From: Geosiphon pyriformis uo1
Taxonomy: Eukaryota > Fungi > Glomeromycota
Assembly (NCBI GenBank): GCA_016748015.1
Contig: JAAOMT010000231.1
Location: forward strand, 145,453-209,452
Direction: 5' to 3'
Length of the DNA: 64,000 nucleotides
The notes beneath the pieces are model-generated. The model made no database searches. It saw only the letters and a list, made by a program, of their open reading frames with translations, and was not told the DNA's origin. Within the stretch, counting starts at the first letter, position 1; the number at the start of each line of letters is the position of its first letter. Below are positions 18,740-31,110 of the stretch, piece after piece. The position numbers and the translations under genes are program-made.

Positions 18740-18800
18740 TTTCTTCAAATCTTGTTTTGAAGGATTAGGATTGAGAAATTATGAATCATATTCAACCCTT
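18740..18800 (-). ncRNA. Candidate omegaRNA scaffold fragment (two adjacent hairpins)
   Basis: Immediately 3' of the Fanzor ORF on its sense strand: an AGGGUUGA..UCAAUCCU stem (8 bp with one G-U) and a CUUCAAA-6nt-UUUGAAG stem. Based on position and structure only. Confidence 0.25.
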
Positions 18801-19800
18801 TATTCCGGATCAATAATAGGCAATATTAAGCATGGTCGTTTTAGGACCAAGGCTCCATCAAGCAATGCCCGGAGGAAGATCTCCTGAGCACCATTTTCAT
18901 CTCTGTCTATCAAAATCCCACAATCTCTCTGATTCTTTGGATGTTGACACATTGACTACAAGCCTTTGATCGTTCTAGGTAGTAACACGAACATCTAATT
19001 CCTCAGCCTTACCGATCAGGCATTTTCCAAAGCGGTAATGCGCCCAACAAAGCATTTCTGGACAGTTTTTCGTGTAATCTTTCTTGAGTTGTCAAAAGGA
19101 GGAAATCGAATACGCGGGTAAAGAATCTGACTGATTTCCAGTGAATTCACTTTGCCTTATCAAGTCATCAGGCAATTTAATTCTGAGAAGGATGCTACTA
19201 ACTTATCCTTTTTACAGATGAGATCATCCAAGTACTTGAAAATGCAAACTATACGTCCAACAGAATGTTCGCCAGTCTTACCTGTACCTTTTGTGGGAGA
19301 GTGCCATGTAAAAAGCGTACGGACGCCAGGATCAAAAGACTGCATGAACAGAGCCATCCCGTTTGGGTTTCGCGGAGCTGTTTTTGCGTCTGGTATACCC
19401 CGGCAAATTTCTGTTCCGACATTATATTGTGAGGAACGGGCCACCTATTATTATGTTTCTTCTTTTTTCGAAATCAAGAAGCCACAAAGCACGCTTATTA
19501 CTGAGATAGTCTCTAAAATCTTTTTATTGATTTCAGCCGCCTCCTGAGAGCATCTTTTTAAAGAAATTGCAACCATACATGTAGCAAGAAGCACTTACAT
19601 TCCTGCATTTCGGCGAGTGGCTGATTGAGCTATTGATCTAAAAGTCCATCTTCCTTCTTGAAATGGTAATCTTCAGAAATACTTGTTGTACATTTTTCAT
19701 GTTTAGAGGGCGTGTTTTTTCATTCCAACGAGGCGAATGGGATGGTTGTTCTTGCAAATGAATGCTATAAACTCCTTGGTCTTTGCGTCAGATTGTACAT
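18800..19800 (-). pseudogene. Decayed Fanzor2 / IS607-type TnpB RNA-guided nuclease gene
   Basis: Motifs in the expected order across frameshifts: INKKIL/RDYLSN..WLLD, RuvC-I SFDPGVRTLFT (Asp codon at 19331-19333), RKITRKTV..MLCWAHYRF, KAEELDVRV..NE..SKACSQC, CGILIDRDENGAQEIFLRAL (RuvC-III). Confidence 0.9.
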
Positions 19801-20330
19801 TTTAACTTTAGCTTTGTGCTCTGTTAGAAGATGGCCGTTATAGTCGTCCCTCATTTTATCATCAAGGGGATAATCTTTTAAATGAGTGGTCAAGTCAAAT
19901 CATCCTTGTCTTTAGCCATGTCGCGATAAATTTCTTTGCCTTCATTTGATAATTAAGCTGTTCATATTTATATAGCATAATCGAGTCATATCGACCTTAA
20001 TACATTTGAGAATTTGTCAAGATCAGGAACAGCGACAAGATTGCTGTCAAGTTCCACGGCACACACTCTTATTATTTAGGATAATTCCATATTTGGCGTT
20101 ATTGACCTTATAGAAGTCTTTCTCTCAAATCAATTATGAGTTCAATCTATTTCTTCGACCATGGAGACTGATCAAACTCAAATATCTTCCAAATTTCTTA
20201 ATTTGCGTCCTCAAATATGGTTTTTCTTATAGCATATATTCAGAAAAAGCTTTTTACCTCTTGTTTAATATTCATCCTCCAATTTTTGAAAGCTACTTTT
20301 AATAATCACTCATCAACTCCATCGTTTCAA
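19801..20330 (-). pseudogene. Decayed coding segment reading in frame into the Fanzor ORF (unknown N-terminal domain)
   Basis: FDLTTHLKDYPLDDKMRDDYNGHLLTEHKAKVK runs without a stop into MYNL at 19800; further upstream NAKYGIILNNKSVCRGT*QQSCRC..PDLDKFSNVLRSI*LDYAI..LSNEGKEIYRDMAK. Confidence 0.6.
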
Positions 20331-24045: not shown

Positions 24046-26077
24046 TAGAAAATTTTTGACCTTCCTTGTTGCGCACTTTTTTTCATAACTGACTTTGAGG
24101 ATAATTTGATTCGCCGCTGTATGAAGCAAAATTTTTTTGAATAATCCCACTTACCAATTTTGCCTGTAATACGGAAAACATGGTTGGCTAGTGAAAATAT
24201 TAAAAAAAAATGCTTACAAAAGAAAAGCAATAGATTTGAAAATTAAAATGAAAAGTCTGGCTAAAGCAAAAAGAAAGTGTATGGTGTGGGGGTAAGACGA
24301 AGGGTTTTTCTGGCTAAAATAATAGGTTGTAATCAGGTGTCAAGAGAGTAAGAGCGCTAGTAAGGCTTTGACCAAAAAGTCAGGTCTCGAACCGCGACAG
24401 CCCATGAAGTAAGTTTTGGCCAGCCAGATGTTTCTCAATTTTCTAAAAAGATAGACTGAAGGGCGAAACGAAGAAGCAAAGAGGCTTACAATTGAGCGGA
24501 CATGGACAGGAAAAGGTGAAAAAACCGAGGTGTATCTGTTATTAATATGACGAATGATGCTACTGGATAGAAGGAAACATCTAATATTTATCTGAACACA
24601 AAATATAATCCACGAGTTAGCATGGCCTAAAATAAGGTCTAAACTCTTTAAGCTTAGCTTAGGAACGCTTGGAATTCTCGATAATAATAAAAGCCCTCGA
24701 GAAACTAATTTCTTCTTGCTAATTTTGGATGAGGGTACTACACACCATACTGCCCTTGCAGCAAGAAAGATTTAGATTAGGCTTTTTCAAAAAGATGACG
24801 ATCATTTTTGTCTAATTAAATTAATTAATATCAAAAAAAATAAAAATAAAAATAAAAATAAATCCATTTATAATTTATAATATAAAATCTTTTATATTGA
24901 GATCCATATTAATGAATATTTATATATGAAATTAATAATTTGTTATTATTATTATTTTGATGCATAATTATTAAAAATCAGTGTATTTCAAATAAATTAT
25001 TTTATGTTAATATTTTTAAAATTTTTAATTCATAAAACAATTTATTATGAAAAAATTTTATTTTTTAATTATTATTATAATTGAAATTAAATTAGACAAA
25101 ATACTTTTATTTTTTATATAATTAATAACAAGTCTAATTTTTTATAATAAATTTTATAATAATAAAATGTATTTATATAAAATAATAATTTTATTTTATT
25201 TTAAACTTAAAAAATTATTTTTTGTATTAATAATATAATAAATATTATTATTTTTTAATATTGCATTTAAAATTTAGATTGTTTGATTTAAATTAAAAAA
25301 GTATTAAAATTACATTAAATTAAGCTTATAAGTTTTATTTTTGAATTAATAAATTTAAAAATAAAATAATCAATATTTAATATTTAAATATAAATCAAAA
25401 AATTATTATTATTTTTATATTATTAAAAAATATATATTGATTTTATTTATTAAATATTAATATTTGCCAAAAACATTATATAAAATAAAAGATTTAATAT
25501 GTAATAAAATTTTTAACAGTAAACAAAGGAATATCAAAACCAAAAAACAATAAAAAAAAGAAAAAGAGGGAAAGAAACGGACAATCAATAAAAAATGAGT
25601 TAATAGAAATGTAGATCAAGAAATAACCTCCGTTGTTTTGATTATATTGACTTTTTATTTTTTACTTCAAAATACTCGAAAATTGAAATTAAAAAATATT
25701 ATTTCTGAAAAAATTTTGTCGGCTTTGAAGCGAAAAGAGTATATTCAAGCATTGAAGGGTAATACTCCTCATTCAATATTTCTTAGCTCTGAAAAGTTTC
25801 ATCCATTCTTTAAACTAATAAAATCATTGAATAAATAGCTGCTTATTCTTTCAACGTACAACTTTCTCAATGATGATCAAATATTATGAGATAGGTGCAC
25901 CGCATATATTATTCAAGTTACCAACAAGTACATGTAGAATGCATGACATTGGTAATAAATGGTCAAAAATCACTAAAAATGAGCTATCCAAAAAAAAAAA
26001 TTCACTTATACTTTTCTTTCTTGTTTATATTACAATTATTTTGTCGAGATCCCATTTATTAAAATTCAAAACAAACA

Positions 26078-26943
26078 ATGAGAAGACAATATTCATTTTT
26101 CGTGGGATTTTATTTTGCAACATTTTTGGTAAGGCCCCGGCGTTGTTATTGACAAGAAATTCATTTTGAAATTTTTTATTCAAGTTCTTTTAACGAAATG
26201 GAGTTTTTTGAACGGGCAGACAATTTCAGTCAATACAATAGAAACTAAATCGGGAATAATTTCATTGAAAAGTTTTAACACTTGGTATAGTTGTAGTACT
26301 AATCTTGTGAATGCTGCCAGTAAGTTTCTTTAATTAACTGTTTCTTTATTTGATGCTTTTTCAAATACTAAAATTTAATTACTCAACCAAAATTTATTTT
26401 CTTTCTTAATAAATAAATTGTTAAGGTTACCAATTAGAAATTACTGATGGGTCCAAATATGTTTCGCCTGATTTGGGGACAACTGTTAATCAAGCTCCAA
26501 TAAAATTTGAACAGAATTATTCTCCTGGCGTAGTCACTGCAATACTCGGTTATCAGGATTTACAAGATTATATTAATCCCAATACGGCACAATTTTTTTA
26601 TGTTCGAGATCTATCCTGCATAGATTCACCTGTTTCCATATGCGAAAAAAATATGGGAAATTGGCCTTTAAGAAATAATACGATTTGGTGTTTAGCTGTA
26701 ACCAATCCTATATCGAAGGATGTACAATTTCAAGTAAATGCCATTTTTGGACCTTCATCTGTTACAAGTCCTAACGTTGACGCTAATTCAACCACTGGCA
26801 GTACTACCACCACCTTTATTACTGAAACTTCCAAAAACGGTGGTGGATTCACTCTCAAGGAGTCAAATCTGGAGGCTATCATGATTTGGACTTTATCATT
26901 AATTTTTCTCTTGCCTATTTTTTATTTATTCATCAATTTTTAG
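26078..26943 (+). CDS. Secreted/GPI-anchored Cys-containing surface protein (paralog 2)
   Basis: Three exons with the same intron phases as 13245-14289; TWYSCS, YINP, LSC, WCLAVTNP, Ser/Thr stalk, hydrophobic C-terminus. Confidence 0.85.
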
Positions 26944-27757
26944 TCAAACCTTTAATCTGTATCATACAGTTGAAATGAATTCTACGTTTAAATACATTAC
27001 TTGAGAAACTGGATCATAATGGAGCCACTTTTTATAATGTCTGAGGATTTGAATATATTAATCAATGTTACTAGAGTATATTATTTTATTATATGAGAAT
27101 AGCCAAATATTCTTAAAAAATTCAAAATATATATATTTCTATTAAAATCTAATATCTCCCTATGCATCTGGAAAACTAGGAAGATTCTAGAAAAGATTTA
27201 TCAAGAAATTGTTTTTGGAACACCAAAAAAGCAGTTTATAATTTTAATAAAGTATATCTTTATTAAAACAATATTTTCGTTCAATAATTTTTTCGTCCAA
27301 AGTATTAGGTTAATTGGAAATAATGGGAATTTTGAAAAGCTGGTTGTGTAATAAAAGTTATTTTTCAAAATTTTCACAATATTTCACGATCCATTTCTCT
27401 TATTCCCCACGTTATTAATCAAGTTCACTCTTATTCGGGGAATCGTTTTTTCACATTTATCTTAATAAGGCCTCTAATCAAAAAAATAAAAATGATTATC
27501 ACTTGCTTCTACGCTTCAGAAATTAAATCGAACGCCACTCTGACAAAAATATGATGATCATAACTAACTTTTTAAAGGTGGTGGTATTTTTCATTTTATT
27601 ACGACATTATGACACAATTTCAGGGTCTAGAAACTTTTATAAATGACAAAGGTAAAGGGAGCGATGAAAATAAGAATTATTATATAAAAAGCCCTCAAAA
27701 TTACATTGCAAAGAAGCAATCCTTAACAACTTTTAATAAAATTCAAACGGAGCAAAC

Positions 27758-28482
27758 ATGAGCGGTGAAGAAAGCCAAAAATACGTGCAAGCTTGGTGAG
27801 CGAGATTGTTCAATAAATTGTGATTTTAAATTTTTAAAGCATTGTTACTACCATTTTCATCACGTTTTGGTAAAAGTAACAAGAGTGCTGAGGCTTGCAA
27901 CGTAAGCTCCGTTTGGTGAAAGCCCGGACTCAATTTGTTTTACCTTTAACACTTTTCATAATTATTACTTGAATATCGTTAGAATTGTGCTGAGAAGATG
28001 AAAGAGGAAGGTTGCGCAAAACAATGCCGTACTAACGCTGGTGAGACTTGAGGCTCTTCAATCTTTCTTTTGGACAATTTTAAAACTTGAATCTTTAATT
28101 AAAACCATTTGTGTGCTACAGAGCTCGCTAATTGCACTTCCAAATTGATTTCCCTTAATTCACCTCAAGCTCCTAAGCTTGCTGAATTGACCGTTGAGTC
28201 AGCCAAATTGTGCGCCAGCATGTGGTAAGCCACGTTTCTCTAAAAGAAATAGTCGCAATGTAAATTTCTAATTGTCTTCAAATTCATTTTTACATTTATG
28301 TTAATCCAGCGGAAAAGTGGGTTTGGAAAAGTTAAATTCTCATGTATTTTCCCTTTTTTTTTTGTGAAACTAACCCCTCTTTTATATGATAGCGTGAAGA
28401 GGATCACTGTAAAGCTTGTACTGAAGCCGCAAGACATCTCTACGAAACCTTGGGCGAGTACCAAAATCATGTTAAAGCCTGA
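27758..28482 (+). CDS. csp3: Csp3/DUF326-like four-helix-bundle copper-storage protein homolog (106 aa)
   Basis: Exons 27758-27795, 27877-27901, 27983-28040, 28122-28224, 28310-28316, 28393-28482 (all GT-AG) give MSGEESQKYVQACNKSAEACNNCAEKMKEEGCAKQCRTNAELANCTSKLISLNSPQAPKLAELTVESAKLCASMCGKREEDHCKACTEAARHLYETLGEYQNHVKA. Confidence 0.82.
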
Positions 28483-31110
28483 AAAGGAACACAACTTATC
28501 CTAAAATAATCACGTTATTAGAACGGTGATTATTCTATTTTATTGATAGGAATATTTGGATCATTGTCATTTTGAAATCTTTTTGCGCTATTGTTTTATC
28601 ATTGAAAACCATAAAAGAAAAGAATGGTCAGTTTGATTGTGTTCATATGAAAAAAATAACCAGTGAGATTTGAAGTACAAGTGTCGTTGAAATATTCGAT
28701 AGTTAAATTACAAAGAACAATAGGGTTTGGAATTTTATAGTTATTATTTGCCACTCGATTTTACCCCTAGCATTATCGATCGCATGATCTTGGTCGTTAT
28801 ACCAAACTTTCGGCAGCGTTTTATTAATCTTTTTATCTTTAGGACAAGTGGTTTATTGCTGATCGAGGTTGGGCTGCCTTTAAGCACTTTGTTCAAGAAA
28901 ATACAGACTATATCACATTAAAGAAATTGATTTTTCAGAATGAATTTTTAGTCAGTTTATTCGTTTTCTCATCTATGCTGAATACATTAGGCGAGATTTT
29001 CTTTTTGTTACAGCTAAAAACGCGCTCTGTGAATATTTTGAAACAAAGATATTTCTCGCACATGGGTTGGTTTAAGGTTCAAGATTTTCACTTTTATTCC
29101 CAAATATGACTACTAATTAAACATTCAAAAGGTTCATTTTCTCGATAAAAAAAATATAAACTATGAATAATTCTGAATCATGTTATCAAAAGAGAAATTT
29201 TATTTTGAAAGAGTTAAAAATCCTAATTTTTAATGAATTTGGTTGTTAAAAGCTTATATACAAATTTTCTCAACATAAATCTTTAAAGTTAGAATGAAAT
29301 ATGTACATACACAATAATTTAATTTTGGAATTTTATATATCATTGATGTTAGAAAAAATGTTAGTCAAAAATGATAAGAAAAATAAGCTTGGTTGGTTTA
29401 AGTTTAGTATAAGAAAATATCAGTCATAATTTTCATGGTTATTTTGATTAAAAAAACAAATAAAATTCGAATGTAATTCTAATTTAAATACTCAATTGGT
29501 ATTTATGTTTAACAAGACTGTTTTAATGTTTTCAAAAGAATTAAGATTATTGAAATACAGTATTTATGTAAGAATATAAGTGACAAGATTTTCTGATTTA
29601 TTATTTGGTTTCTTTGTTATACTTTAAATTCATAAACTTTATCTTTTATAATAATTCTTCTCTGTTCTTAATATTTAAATTTAATTCCAAATAATTATGT
29701 TTATATTGTACATATAAATTATTATCATGTTTTATAACACCAACCCATTAAATTAGCAAATTCAAGATATCAAAAATTATCTTAGTTAAAATAGCTTTGA
29801 ACAATAAAAAAGAAAGCTTGATTTACAAAAATTCAATCTTTGGGTTGTATTATATGTTATTTTCTTTTAAAAATTATATATATAAGAAGGCTTGTATTCG
29901 ATGAATACAGATTTATATCAGTCACATTTTTATTTTTTTTTCAATTTTAAAAATATAATTTTATTATTTGTTGTTTGTAAAAAAAAAGCTTGAATATAAG
30001 ATAAATAAAATGAATTATTTACTTTAAAGATATTTAAAAAAATTCTGGTGTCTGGAATTCTATCCTCCATTACACTTTATGCAAATATATGAAAATAATT
30101 TTTTCCTTTTTAATAATATAATAATTGATGGATTTGATTTTATCAAGAAACCAGCTCTGGAGGAAAGAATCCCAAAATTTTAAGCCAAAACTTTGTTTTG
30201 TAAGATTTATCAAAACTATTTGAACATAATTAAACCATTGCGAAATGGTAATGGCTGTAAAGTTAAAAAGTTGTACCAAAGAAGGCGGGATATTTCCAAA
30301 ACCTGGAGTTCGCCCCACAGACATGTAATTTTCATAAAAAAAACTTTTATTACAAGTGGCTAGCAATTTCTTCATAAAAGTATCAAAATAAGATTTTACC
30401 CACTTTCTCTGAACTAAAATAGACATACAAACCCATGACATGTATAAGAAATAAAGAAATCTTTCTTAAATAGAAAAAGTCCAAATTCCAAGTCATCATG
30501 CCAAAGACCCTCACAATAAACAAAAGGAAAACAAAAAAAAAGTTTGTTGATAACTACAATTTTACTTGCATAGAAATTTGAATAAAATTCAAAGATCAAT
30601 TTATGAAATCCTTTTTTTCTAAAACTTTAGTTAGTTCAAAGATTAATATAATGGGTAGTTAATTGTGTGATGAAGTTTGATTAAACATTTTGTTAATCTA
30701 ACAAGGCCACAAATTCAGCCATGAAAATTCTTCATTTGGTAATTCTAATTAACAATGAATTTTTAGTTTATCGTTGAATCTGGCTTTTTAAAAACTGATA
30801 AAAGATTTAGTATCTTTTAAATCAAATATCGAACAAGTTTTTTACCATTTCCGTCTCGCTTCATTAATTTGAAAAATGAAACTGAAAAATGATTGGGGTA
30901 GATGTGAATTTCGAACTTTGTTTTCATTATAGTTTTGCTAATGAAGGTTTAAACATTATGTATTTGAACGGTAAAAAGTGAAATTTCTTGGTAAAATCGA
31001 TTTTCTAGATTCAAAAATTAACGGATTTATTTTGGAAATAAAATTTTAGCCACAAATTAGGGAATCATAGAAACTAATAATTTCAGGAAGGATATCAAGA
31101 AAAAGTTCTT

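What the first reader, a model, noticed from the sequence alone, without database searches (positions are those of the whole stretch)
27758..28482. Intron-rich fungal homolog of bacterial Csp3 copper-storage proteins with about half the cysteines
Seen: six exons splice into a 106-aa helical protein with AC-x6-CNNC, GC-x3-C, NSP, C-x3-CGK-x3-DHCKAC. It is absent from the ORF track. Established: Csp3/YhjQ (DUF326) proteins are mainly prokaryotic four-helix bundles lined by many Cys (19 in B. subtilis Csp3) that bind Cu(I), and they share the SP turn and CGKHDHDHCxAC-like segment. Inference: an old bacterium-to-fungus transfer, fully intronised. With only 10 Cys and the rest replaced by Ala/Ser/Thr/Leu, it may have lower capacity or a changed role such as chaperone, sensor or a different metal. 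I cannot confirm how well eukaryotic members are already described.
Basis: partly seen in the sequence, partly recalled or inferred. Interest (0 to 1): 0.8.

Follow-up and report, generated by a model that had tools for sequence, protein, structure and literature searches.

The report
Cysteine-poor Csp3-like gene in Geosiphon
A small five-intron gene of the fungus Geosiphon pyriformis encodes a very diverged relative of bacterial Csp3 copper-storage proteins that keeps cysteines only near the open end of the helix bundle, and the public annotation misses a 7-base exon and so mistranslates its last helix.

Summary
An alternative acceptor gives 103 aa.

The genome is Geosiphon pyriformis. Its GenBank protein KAG9300942.1, a singleton "hypothetical protein", equals exons 1-4. 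It skips the 7-nt exon 28310-28316, so it reads the last exon out of frame.

No single exon hits Pfam, NCBIfam or PDB. Two referenced pieces do match a profile of 39 bacterial Csp3s:
- exons 1-4: hhalign P 8.8e-6;
- exon 6: hhalign P 4.7e-5.

The matches are colinear and in register. The gap between them is exactly the C-G-K that the split codon and micro-exon encode.

Eight of the 10 Cys sit on family Cys columns, clustered toward the alpha3-alpha4 loop (mouth) end. The closed-end columns hold Ala, Thr, Leu, Asn, Ser and Tyr.

My best reading is a real, intron-bearing, cytosolic Csp3-like protein with a shortened thiolate core, and so a small Cu(I) capacity.

The following could not be tested or resolved:
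- the fold of the joined protein, a step left out by rule;
- the donor lineage.

The parts
27638..27687 (+). two TATA-like boxes (TATAAAT at 27638, TATATAA at 27681), 71-120 nt upstream of the ATG; possible core promoter
   Evidence: consensus match only. No MRE, CuRE or Ace1-type copper or metal elements lie in the 800 nt upstream.
27758..27795 (+). exon 1 (38 nt): start codon, N-terminus and start of helix 1; no signal or Tat motif
   Evidence: Same start as GenBank KAG9300942.1.
27877..27901 (+). exon 2 (25 nt; alternative acceptor at 27886 gives 16 nt): helix 1, ...AEACN
   Evidence: The 25-nt form is the one in KAG9300942.1. Its AAG acceptor is better than GAG and it makes intron 1 81 nt long, like introns 2 and 3. 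The choice is not settled.
27983..28040 (+). exon 3 (58 nt): end of helix 1, short alpha1-alpha2 loop and start of helix 2 (NC...GC-x3-C)
28122..28224 (+). exon 4 (103 nt): helix 2, N-S-P turn and helix 3; ends in a split Cys codon (TG|)
   Evidence: Second-best hit of the Csp3 HMM among 4815 six-frame pieces of the window, at HMM positions 46-80. Single copy in the genome.
28310..28316 (+). exon 5, a 7-nt micro-exon (CGGAAAA): completes Cys and adds Gly-Lys, the family's C-G-K; it restores the frame of exon 6
   Evidence: CAG acceptor and GTGGGT donor. The flanking introns are 85 and 76 nt, against 168 nt if the exon is skipped. There is a CTAAC branch site 19 nt before exon 6. The pattern is unique in the window, with shuffle frequency 1.3e-4. 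It fills exactly the three-column gap between the two profile matches. It is missing from the GenBank model. There is no RNA evidence.
28393..28482 (+). exon 6 (90 nt with stop): alpha3-alpha4 loop remnant (R-E-E-D-H-C) and helix 4 (C-K-A-C, then Ala/Leu/Leu on former Cys columns)
   Evidence: Best hit of the Csp3 HMM in the whole window (13.2 bits, E 0.018, HMM 86-103). hhalign P 4.7e-5. Single copy.

Best explanation
This is a genuine nuclear, spliceosomal-intron-bearing gene of Geosiphon pyriformis. It encodes a cytosolic protein of about 106 aa that is homologous to bacterial Csp3 copper-storage proteins (DUF326).

Shown:
- The gene structure.
- The homology across all four helices.
- The loss of 11 of the 19 family Cys columns.

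Inferred:
- The kept Cys sit mostly toward the end of the bundle that carries the alpha1-alpha2 and alpha3-alpha4 loops, which is the 'mouth' of Csp3s. These are C20 and C23 on helix 1, C32 on helix 2, C71 and C75 on helix 3, and the two Cys of D-H-C-x-x-C on helix 4. C13 lies further down helix 1.
- A Met occupies the mouth column of helix 1, and one His remains of H-D-H-D-H.
- The Cys columns toward the closed end have become Tyr, Ser, Asn, Ala, Ala, Thr, Ala, Ala, Leu and Leu. That would form an ordinary hydrophobic core.
- The likeliest mechanism is therefore a four-helix bundle holding one small thiolate-bridged Cu(I) cluster near an open mouth, roughly 4-8 Cu(I) against 18-20 in classical Csp3. 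It would act as a low-capacity buffer or hand-over protein, not a bulk store.
- The correct mRNA includes the 7-nt exon, and the GenBank model is mis-spliced at its 3' end.
For: Gene model.

The public protein matches exons 1-4.

Homology:
- hhalign of P0001:1-74 against 39 bacterial Csp3s gives probability 83% and P 8.8e-6 over 69 columns with one loop gap.
- Exon 6 gives probability 68% and P 4.7e-5.
- The two matches are colinear. They leave columns 90-92 (C-G-K) for the micro-exon.
- In an unbiased scan of all 4815 six-frame pieces of the window, exons 6 and 4 are the top two hits.
- Summed Smith-Waterman scores reach 138, against 73 +/- 8 (maximum 98) for composition-preserving shuffles.
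- Five group HMMs each hit both pieces at single-comparison E values from 6e-8 to 7e-5.
- Pfam's only hit is DUF326 (14.8 bits).
- The three listed ESM-feature neighbours are Csp clusters (0.86-0.88), against 0.81 once Csp is excluded.

Fold:
- Single-sequence AlphaFold of exons 1-4 gives three helices with the turn at N-S-P (pLDDT 75). Its top Foldseek rows are RkCsp3, BsCsp3 and PA2107, though none is significant.

Cys columns and mouth geometry:
- Cys-column table.
- The mouth lies at the alpha3-loop-alpha4 end, with the His motif and Cys38/54/111 of MtCsp3: PMC10155185.
Against: - There is no transcript evidence.
- Pfam stays below its gathering score, and nothing rings per exon.
- The full four-helix fold and the Pfam score of the joined protein were not computed.
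- Two Cys (C36, C45) fall off the main family Cys columns.
- No copper-responsive promoter motif lies upstream.
- No orthologue was found in any annotated proteome, so purifying selection cannot be shown.
- The MSA-guided fold (pLDDT 96, TM 0.84 to 5fig) is circular.
- Copper binding is pure inference.
Confidence: 0.6

Rival explanations
1. It is a true Csp3 homologue that has been re-purposed. The remaining Cys/His/Met cluster binds another cofactor (Zn, or an Fe-S cluster) or acts as a thiol redox switch, not as a Cu(I) store.
For: - Only 10 Cys remain, and two of them (C36, C45) are off the main family columns.
- Two of the three loop His are lost.
- Some DUF326 clusters are auto-named 'ferredoxin'.
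- The weak gapless resemblance of helices 2-3 to the Zn-binding AZUL domain shows that the spacing could suit Zn.
- The terminal branch is very long and the composition is altered.
Against: - The Cys that survive are the ones on the family's Cu-binding columns, on all four helices and at one level of the bundle.
- A Met sits on a mouth Cys column, and Met is a Cu(I) ligand in Csps (PMC7558416; PMC10155185).
- No family member with a non-copper role is documented in the papers read.
Confidence: 0.22
2. The GenBank isoform is the real product or the gene is decaying. In this reading the micro-exon is not used, the last helix is not translated in the Csp3 frame, and the locus is a relic of an old transfer with no bundle-forming product.
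For: - The only public model skips the 7-nt exon.
- 7-nt exons are rare and hard for the spliceosome.
- The alternative frame of exon 6 is also open, for 36 codons.
- No orthologues show constraint.
- The protein lies on an extreme branch.
Against: - The Csp3 frame of exon 6 is the best Csp3-profile hit in the whole window and is in exact register with exon 4 once C-G-K is inserted.
- The required AG|CGGAAAA|GT is unique in 64 kb.
- Including the exon gives introns of 85 and 76 nt, like the other three (81 nt each). Skipping it gives a single 168-nt intron.
- The annotated tail has four Pro and no family similarity.
Confidence: 0.13
3. The resemblance is chance: an unrelated Cys-containing helical micro-protein, or an AZUL-like zinc finger, and not a Csp3 relative.
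For: - The PDB phmmer search of exons 1-4 returns only the UBE3A AZUL domain (16-17 bits, E about 0.1, about 40% identity over 42 gapless residues). No Csp3 chain is returned.
- All Pfam and Foldseek values are below significance.
Against: - Only two of the four AZUL zinc ligands (C-x4-C-x4-C-x28-C) are Cys here, by reading the alignment.
- Pfam's AZUL model does not hit.
- The Csp3 evidence comes from two independent pieces, covers all four helices, survives composition-preserving shuffles, and predicts the micro-exon.
Confidence: 0.05

Closest known systems
Classical bacterial Csp3 (B. subtilis YhjQ/BsCsp3, PDB 5fig/6wkt; M. trichosporium MtCsp3, 5arm; S. lividans Ccsp, 6ei0)
   Same: - Length of about 105-110 aa, with no export signal.
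- Four helices in the same order, with an N-S-P turn between helices 2 and 3, as in Bacillales members.
- C-G-K ... D-H-C-x-x-C at the alpha3-alpha4 junction with identical spacing.
- E-A-C-N-x-C in helix 1.
   Different: - 10 Cys instead of 18-19, and the closed-end half of the core is not thiolate-lined.
- One His instead of three in the loop.
- The alpha1-alpha2 loop is 7 residues shorter.
- About 25-30% identity.
- It is a eukaryotic gene with five introns.
RkCsp3 subgroup (Methylocystis sp. Rockwell, PDB 6zif; PMC10155185)
   Same: It is a natural Csp3 variant in which part of the Cu(I) site set is missing and a Met replaces a polar or Cys mouth residue. It is the top Foldseek row for the unbiased model.
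   Different: RkCsp3 loses the mouth sites, keeps the main core and still binds about 18 Cu(I). The Geosiphon protein does the opposite: it keeps the mouth-side Cys and loses the deep core.
Cys-reduced cyanobacterial DUF326 proteins (e.g. WP_039728152.1 of Leptolyngbya; loci L067, L079, L080, L083)
   Same: - 14-16 Cys, with losses at the start of helix 1, the start of helix 3 and the end of helix 4, which is the same closed end.
- A shortened alpha1-alpha2 loop.
- C-x3-C at the start of helix 2. In my sample this column is Cys mainly in cyanobacteria, and Geosiphon C36 sits on it.
   Different: They still have 14-16 Cys and 24-28% identity to the Geosiphon protein. There is no supported grouping in the tree and no better HMM score than other phyla give.
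[quoted passage not shown] 2018)
   Same: They are eukaryotic occurrences of the family.
   Different: I could not retrieve those sequences: the top 120 of 5568 hits were all bacterial-type. Whether they carry introns, are Cys-depleted or are contaminants is unknown to me. No eukaryotic member has been characterised in the papers read.
Eukaryotic metallothioneins (e.g. yeast Cup1)
   Same: They are small cytosolic Cys-based Cu(I) cluster binders. The predicted capacity is similar.
   Different: Metallothioneins are unstructured until metal binds. This protein is predicted to be a pre-folded helical bundle, and there is no sequence relation.
AZUL zinc-finger domain of UBE3A (PDB 2kr1, 8ept)
   Same: A gapless match of about 42 residues to helices 2-3 (E-G-C...T-N...C...A-K-L-C), E about 0.1.
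   Different: Two of the four Zn ligands are not conserved. There is no Pfam AZUL hit, the match covers only part of the protein, and there is no HECT ligase context.

Membership tests
Csp/DUF326 (Pfam PF03860) | Pfam PF03860 score above the gathering cut-off (20.4 bits) | tested here: inconclusive
   - Exons 1-4 (P0001:1-74) score 14.8 bits, E 0.029, as the only Pfam hit.
- Single exons and the genome scan give nothing.
- The last helix, which would add a second repeat, could not be scanned joined to the rest.
- Bacterial controls score 42-57 bits.
Csp/DUF326 | Sequence homology across all four helices to characterised Csp3s | tested here: met
   - hhalign P 8.8e-6 (helices 1-3) and 4.7e-5 (helix 4), colinear and in register.
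- The window-wide HMM scan ranks exons 6 and 4 first and second of 4815 pieces.
- Shuffle control.
- The profile used hits 5fig, 6ei0, 5arm and 6zif.
Csp/DUF326 | Four-helix bundle monomer | tested here: inconclusive
   - Exons 1-4 fold as three long helices with the expected turns (pLDDT 75 without an MSA; 96 with a Csp3 MSA, TM 0.84 to 5fig, which is circular).
- The fourth helix could not be folded with them because the joined step was left out.
Csp3 (classical) | Core lined along its whole length by Cys (18-19 per monomer) | tested here: not met
   There are 10 Cys, 8 of them on family Cys columns. Eleven of the 19 Cys columns of the reference Csp3 hold Y, S, M, N, A, A, T, A, A, L and L.
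Csp3 (classical) | alpha3-loop-alpha4 His motif (C-G-K-H-D-H-D-H-C) | tested here: not met
   C-G-K and D-H-C are kept with the same spacing, but H-D-H has become R-E-E, leaving one His of three.
Csp3 versus Csp1 | No Tat or signal peptide (cytosolic) | tested here: met
   The N-terminus is short and acidic, with no twin-Arg and no hydrophobic stretch before helix 1. It aligns from residue 4 with the start of cytosolic Csp3s. This was read from the sequence; no predictor was run.
Csp3 | Homotetramer; high-affinity binding of many Cu(I) | not testable with these tools
   Needs recombinant protein. Complex prediction was not used because the complete chain cannot be submitted.
AZUL zinc finger (UBE3A N-terminal domain) | Four Zn ligands, C-x4-C-x4-C-x28-C | tested here: not met
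   In the alignment, only the first and last ligand positions are Cys here. Pfam gives no AZUL hit at E up to 10.

The most novel reading that the evidence does not exclude
The gene descends from a cyanobacterial Csp3 taken up from the Nostoc-type endosymbiont lineage that Geosiphon alone among fungi houses. It has since been intronised and pared down to a mouth-only copper site. That site would work in copper hand-over or sensing at the symbiotic interface, not in storage.

The hints are weak:
- C36 sits on a column that is Cys mainly in cyanobacterial members.
- A shortened alpha1-alpha2 loop and closed-end Cys loss also occur in a cyanobacterial subgroup.
- Cyanobacterial rows are the nearest by path in the tree.
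- However, there is no branch support, and the group HMM scores do not favour cyanobacteria.
Probability: 0.08. Interest if true: 0.8.

Novelty: new variant of a known kind. Interest (0 to 1): 0.47.

Why it matters
Csp3s are treated as a bacterial answer to cytosolic copper, with metallothioneins as the eukaryotic one. An intron-bearing nuclear Csp3 relative cannot be a bacterial contaminant of the assembly, because bacterial genes have no spliceosomal introns. It would therefore place the four-helix copper-store fold in a fungus of the arbuscular-mycorrhizal lineage.

Its natural truncation of the thiolate core to the mouth half is a ready-made test of how many Cys layers a Csp needs to take up, hold and release Cu(I). 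Structural chemists currently address that question with point mutants.

There is also a practical point. The GenBank protein has a wrong C-terminus because a 7-nt exon was missed. That may be why no family scan flags it, and similar genes may be hidden in other fungal genomes.

Tried and rejected
- Per-exon scans (Pfam, NCBIfam, PDB phmmer) were blank: the exons are too short.
- PF03860 and the 39-sequence Csp3 profile on the whole Geosiphon genome gave nothing. No classical copy and no paralogue were found.
- Aligning exon fragments with a bacterial Csp3 in MAFFT, to build a mixed query, scattered the fragments. I dropped it.
- The exon-4 phmmer search over 1.84e9 representatives found only the species' own protein and an unrelated repeat protein, P0002.
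- The word search with P0001:1-74 found no other protein.
- The word search with a mixed profile gave 5568 DUF326 proteins. The 120 listed were all bacterial-type, so no eukaryotic relative was recovered.
- The look-up of encoding contigs had no record of the gene.
- The tree left Geosiphon on a branch of 3.48 with no supported set.
- Group HMMs showed no donor: Bacteroidota 29.7, cyanobacteria 28.3-28.6, Bacillota 26.9 and Pseudomonadota 19.0 summed bits.
- Foldseek against PDB gave no significant row, and the ESM Atlas shape search gave no hit.
- No copper or metal promoter motifs were found upstream.
- Neighbouring ORFs have no Pfam family.
- The AZUL reading was rejected (see the rival explanations).
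- The joined spliced protein was never sent to a search, family, fold or complex tool. It was only translated in a local script so that it could be read.

Full report
**What is there**

The window is 26.6% G+C. It is contig C553:145453-209452 of a 128-Mb, 792-contig genome.

It is KAG9300942.1, 'hypothetical protein G9A89_005000 [Geosiphon pyriformis]', 111 aa, and a singleton cluster. Published assembly figures for that species are 129 Mb, 795 scaffolds and 29% G+C (PMC9453076). These fit the genome here. Geosiphon is a Glomeromycotina fungus, the only one known to house Nostoc cyanobacteria.

**Gene model**

I read 27400-28900 directly. The + strand carries six exons:

| Exon | Coordinates | Length |
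|---|---|---|
| 1 | 27758-27795 | 38 nt |
| 2 | 27877-27901 | 25 nt |
| 3 | 27983-28040 | 58 nt |
| 4 | 28122-28224 | 103 nt |
| 5 | 28310-28316 | 7 nt |
| 6 | 28393-28482 | 90 nt, ending in TGA |

- The five introns are 81, 81, 81, 85 and 76 nt long.
- Their donors are GTGAGC, GTAAGC, GTGAGA, GTAAGC and GTGGGT. Their acceptors are AAG, TAG, CAG, CAG and TAG.
- Intron G+C is 0.28-0.35, against 0.43-0.56 in the exons.
- TATA-like boxes lie 71-120 nt upstream of the ATG.

One ambiguity remains. An acceptor at 27886 (GAG) would shorten exon 2 to 16 nt and the protein to 103 aa. Both versions keep the heptad spacing of the helix-1 Cys. I prefer 27877 for three reasons: AAG is a better acceptor than GAG, intron 1 then matches its neighbours at 81 nt, and GenBank uses it. 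I have no decisive evidence.

**The micro-exon**

It then joins exon 4 directly to exon 6, shifts the frame, and ends in a proline-containing tail with no family similarity.

Four things support the 7-nt exon (CGGAAAA):
- It completes the split Cys codon and adds Gly-Lys, which puts exon 6 into the frame that reads R-E-E-D-H-C-K-A-C.
- It has a CAG acceptor and a GT donor. Intron 5 has a canonical CTAAC 19 nt before its end.
- Including it gives two introns of the normal size. Skipping it gives one intron of 168 nt.
- The string AG|YGGNAAR|GT occurs exactly once on both strands of the 64-kb window, here. It arises in 1.3e-4 of shuffles of the interval.

The strongest argument is homology, which is set out next.

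**Homology to Csp3**

Single exons are too short. Pfam, NCBIfam and PDB phmmer give nothing for them, and PF03860 does not ring on the genome.

I fetched 50 bacterial loci carrying the classical C-G-K-H-D-H-D-H-C motif. I confirmed three of them as DUF326 (42-57 bits) and as Csp-family by NCBIfam. I built a profile from 39 of them, and it finds the solved Csp3s 5fig, 6ei0, 5arm and 6zif.

I scanned all 4815 six-frame stop-to-stop pieces of the window with that profile.
- The best hit is exon 6 (13.2 bits, E 0.018, profile positions 86-103).
- The second is exon 4 (7.0 bits, positions 46-80).

The public protein gives a legitimate reference for exons 1-4 joined (P0001:1-74).
- hhalign of P0001:1-74 against the 39-sequence alignment gives probability 83% and P 8.8e-6 over 69 columns, with a single 7-residue gap in the alpha1-alpha2 loop.
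- Exon 6 alone gives probability 68% and P 4.7e-5.
- MAFFT reproduces the same register.
- The two matches are colinear. What lies between them is exactly C-G-K, the residues supplied by the split codon and the micro-exon.

Further support:
- Summed Smith-Waterman scores of the two pieces reach 138. Composition-preserving shuffles give 73 +/- 8, with a maximum of 98.
- Five phylum-level HMMs each hit both pieces at single-comparison E values from 6e-8 to 7e-5.
- Pfam's only hit on P0001:1-74 is DUF326, at 14.8 bits, below the 20.4 cut-off.
- The three listed language-model neighbours in the ESM Atlas are Csp clusters (0.86-0.88; 191-196 of 256 shared features). With Csp excluded, the best score is 0.81.

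I consider homology established and formal Pfam membership unproven.

I translated it only in local scripts so that I could read it. As a result, three things are not available:
- the Pfam score of the complete protein;
- its fold as a four-helix unit;
- an exact-sequence look-up of the corrected product.

No read evidence could be laid on the junctions.

**Structure**

- P0001:1-74 folded without an alignment gives three helices (residues 3-26, 30-51 with a kink, and 57-72) and the turn at N-S-P, with pLDDT 75.
- Foldseek finds nothing significant. Its first rows are RkCsp3, BsCsp3 and the DUF326 protein PA2107.
- With the Csp3 alignment as the MSA, pLDDT is 96 and the model overlays 5fig at TM 0.84 and 1.3 Å. 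That result is circular and shows only compatibility.

**Where the cysteines went**

I mapped the protein on the family's Cys columns.

| Helix | Kept | Replaced by |
|---|---|---|
| 1 | C13, C20, C23 | Y9, S16, M27 |
| 2 | C32 | N39, A43 |
| 3 | C71, C75 | A61, T64, A68 |
| 4 | the two Cys of D-H-C-x-x-C | Ala, Leu, Leu |

- C36 sits on a column that is Cys in 41% of the aligned bacterial rows. In my wider sample of about 180 sequences those are almost entirely the cyanobacterial members.
- C45 is on no Cys column.
- In Csp3s the alpha3-loop-alpha4 region, its His motif and three nearby Cys form the mouth of the bundle. The other end is closed (PMC10155185; PMC7558416).
- The Geosiphon protein therefore keeps the thiolates of the mouth-side half on all four helices, plus one His and a Met on a mouth column. 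The deep half has become an ordinary small or hydrophobic core.
- This is the mirror image of the RkCsp3 subgroup, which loses mouth sites and keeps the core.

My mechanistic reading is a pre-folded cytosolic bundle that holds one small Cu(I)-thiolate cluster, on the order of 4-8 ions. Tetranuclear Cu4-thiolate units are documented loading intermediates in Csp3 (abstract of PMC5519932). Such a protein would be a low-capacity buffer or hand-over protein. This step is inference.

**Origin**

- The gene is single-copy. No classical Csp3 rings elsewhere in the assembly.
- No annotated protein of any organism shares words with it.
- In a tree of 88 sequences it sits on a terminal branch of 3.48 substitutions per site, against a median of 0.13, with no supported placement.
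- Summed group-HMM scores do not single out a donor.
- Five introns, host-like base composition and this divergence fit an old acquisition or fast evolution. Neither the direction nor the donor can be shown.
- A weak cyanobacterial flavour is recorded as a lead only, because of Geosiphon's Nostoc symbiosis. It consists of the C36 column, the short alpha1-alpha2 loop, closed-end Cys loss in a cyanobacterial subgroup, and nearest rows by path in the tree.
- About 10% of 201 sampled cyanobacterial genomes carry DUF326.

**Rivals**

- Same homologue, other cofactor or redox role: plausible (0.22).
- GenBank isoform or decaying relic: possible until RNA is seen (0.13).
- Chance, or an AZUL-like zinc finger: the UBE3A AZUL match (E about 0.1) keeps only two of four ligands, covers part of the protein and has no Pfam support (0.05).

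**Novelty**

[quoted passage not shown] 2018, which is not held). A fungal Csp3 as such is therefore not new.

Three things are new here:
- This member is hidden by a mis-spliced annotation.
- Its spliceosomal introns rule out bacterial contamination of the assembly.
- Its cysteine loss is polarised to the closed end.

I found no paper on a characterised eukaryotic member. I rate it a new variant of a known kind and of moderate interest. The main open point is transcript evidence.

Noticed in passing
window 28225-28504: The GenBank model KAG9300942.1 joins exon 4 directly to exon 6. It reads 36 codons in the wrong frame, to a stop at 28502-28504. The record probably needs a corrected CDS that includes the 7-nt exon.
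   Followed up: yes
window 24900-25500: An extremely AT-rich stretch of about 600 nt, with G+C of 7-8% in 300-nt windows. It lies upstream of the gene neighbourhood.
   Followed up: no
loci L067, L079, L080, L083 (cyanobacterial genomes G156, G142, G013, G130): A cyanobacterial DUF326 subgroup has only 14-16 Cys. It has lost Cys at the start of helix 1, the start of helix 3 and the end of helix 4, and it has a shortened alpha1-alpha2 loop. One member is WP_039728152.1 of Leptolyngbya. It is a bacterial precedent for closed-end Cys loss, and the papers read do not discuss it.
   Followed up: partly
P0001 residues 27-71 (window exons 3-4): A gapless match of about 42 residues and about 40% identity to the AZUL zinc-finger domain of human UBE3A (PDB 8ept, 2kr1), E about 0.1. 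I judged it to be chance because only two of the four Zn ligand positions are Cys.
   Followed up: partly
P0002 (155 aa): A repeat protein built of L-N-S-P-K-L-P-K-L-Q-K-L-T-V-C-E-like units matched exon 4 at E 1.4e-5 through the N-S-P...K-L...L-T-V stretch. It looks like a repeat or compositional match and not a relative.
   Followed up: no
window 26473-26943 (+): A 156-aa ORF with a Ser/Thr-rich stretch and a hydrophobic C-terminus, as in a secreted or GPI-anchored protein. It lies 800 nt upstream on the same strand and has no Pfam family.
   Followed up: partly
window 18800-20330: Earlier notes of this scan flag a Fanzor/TnpB-like relic here, and a LINE-related element just before the window. 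I did not examine them.
   Followed up: no
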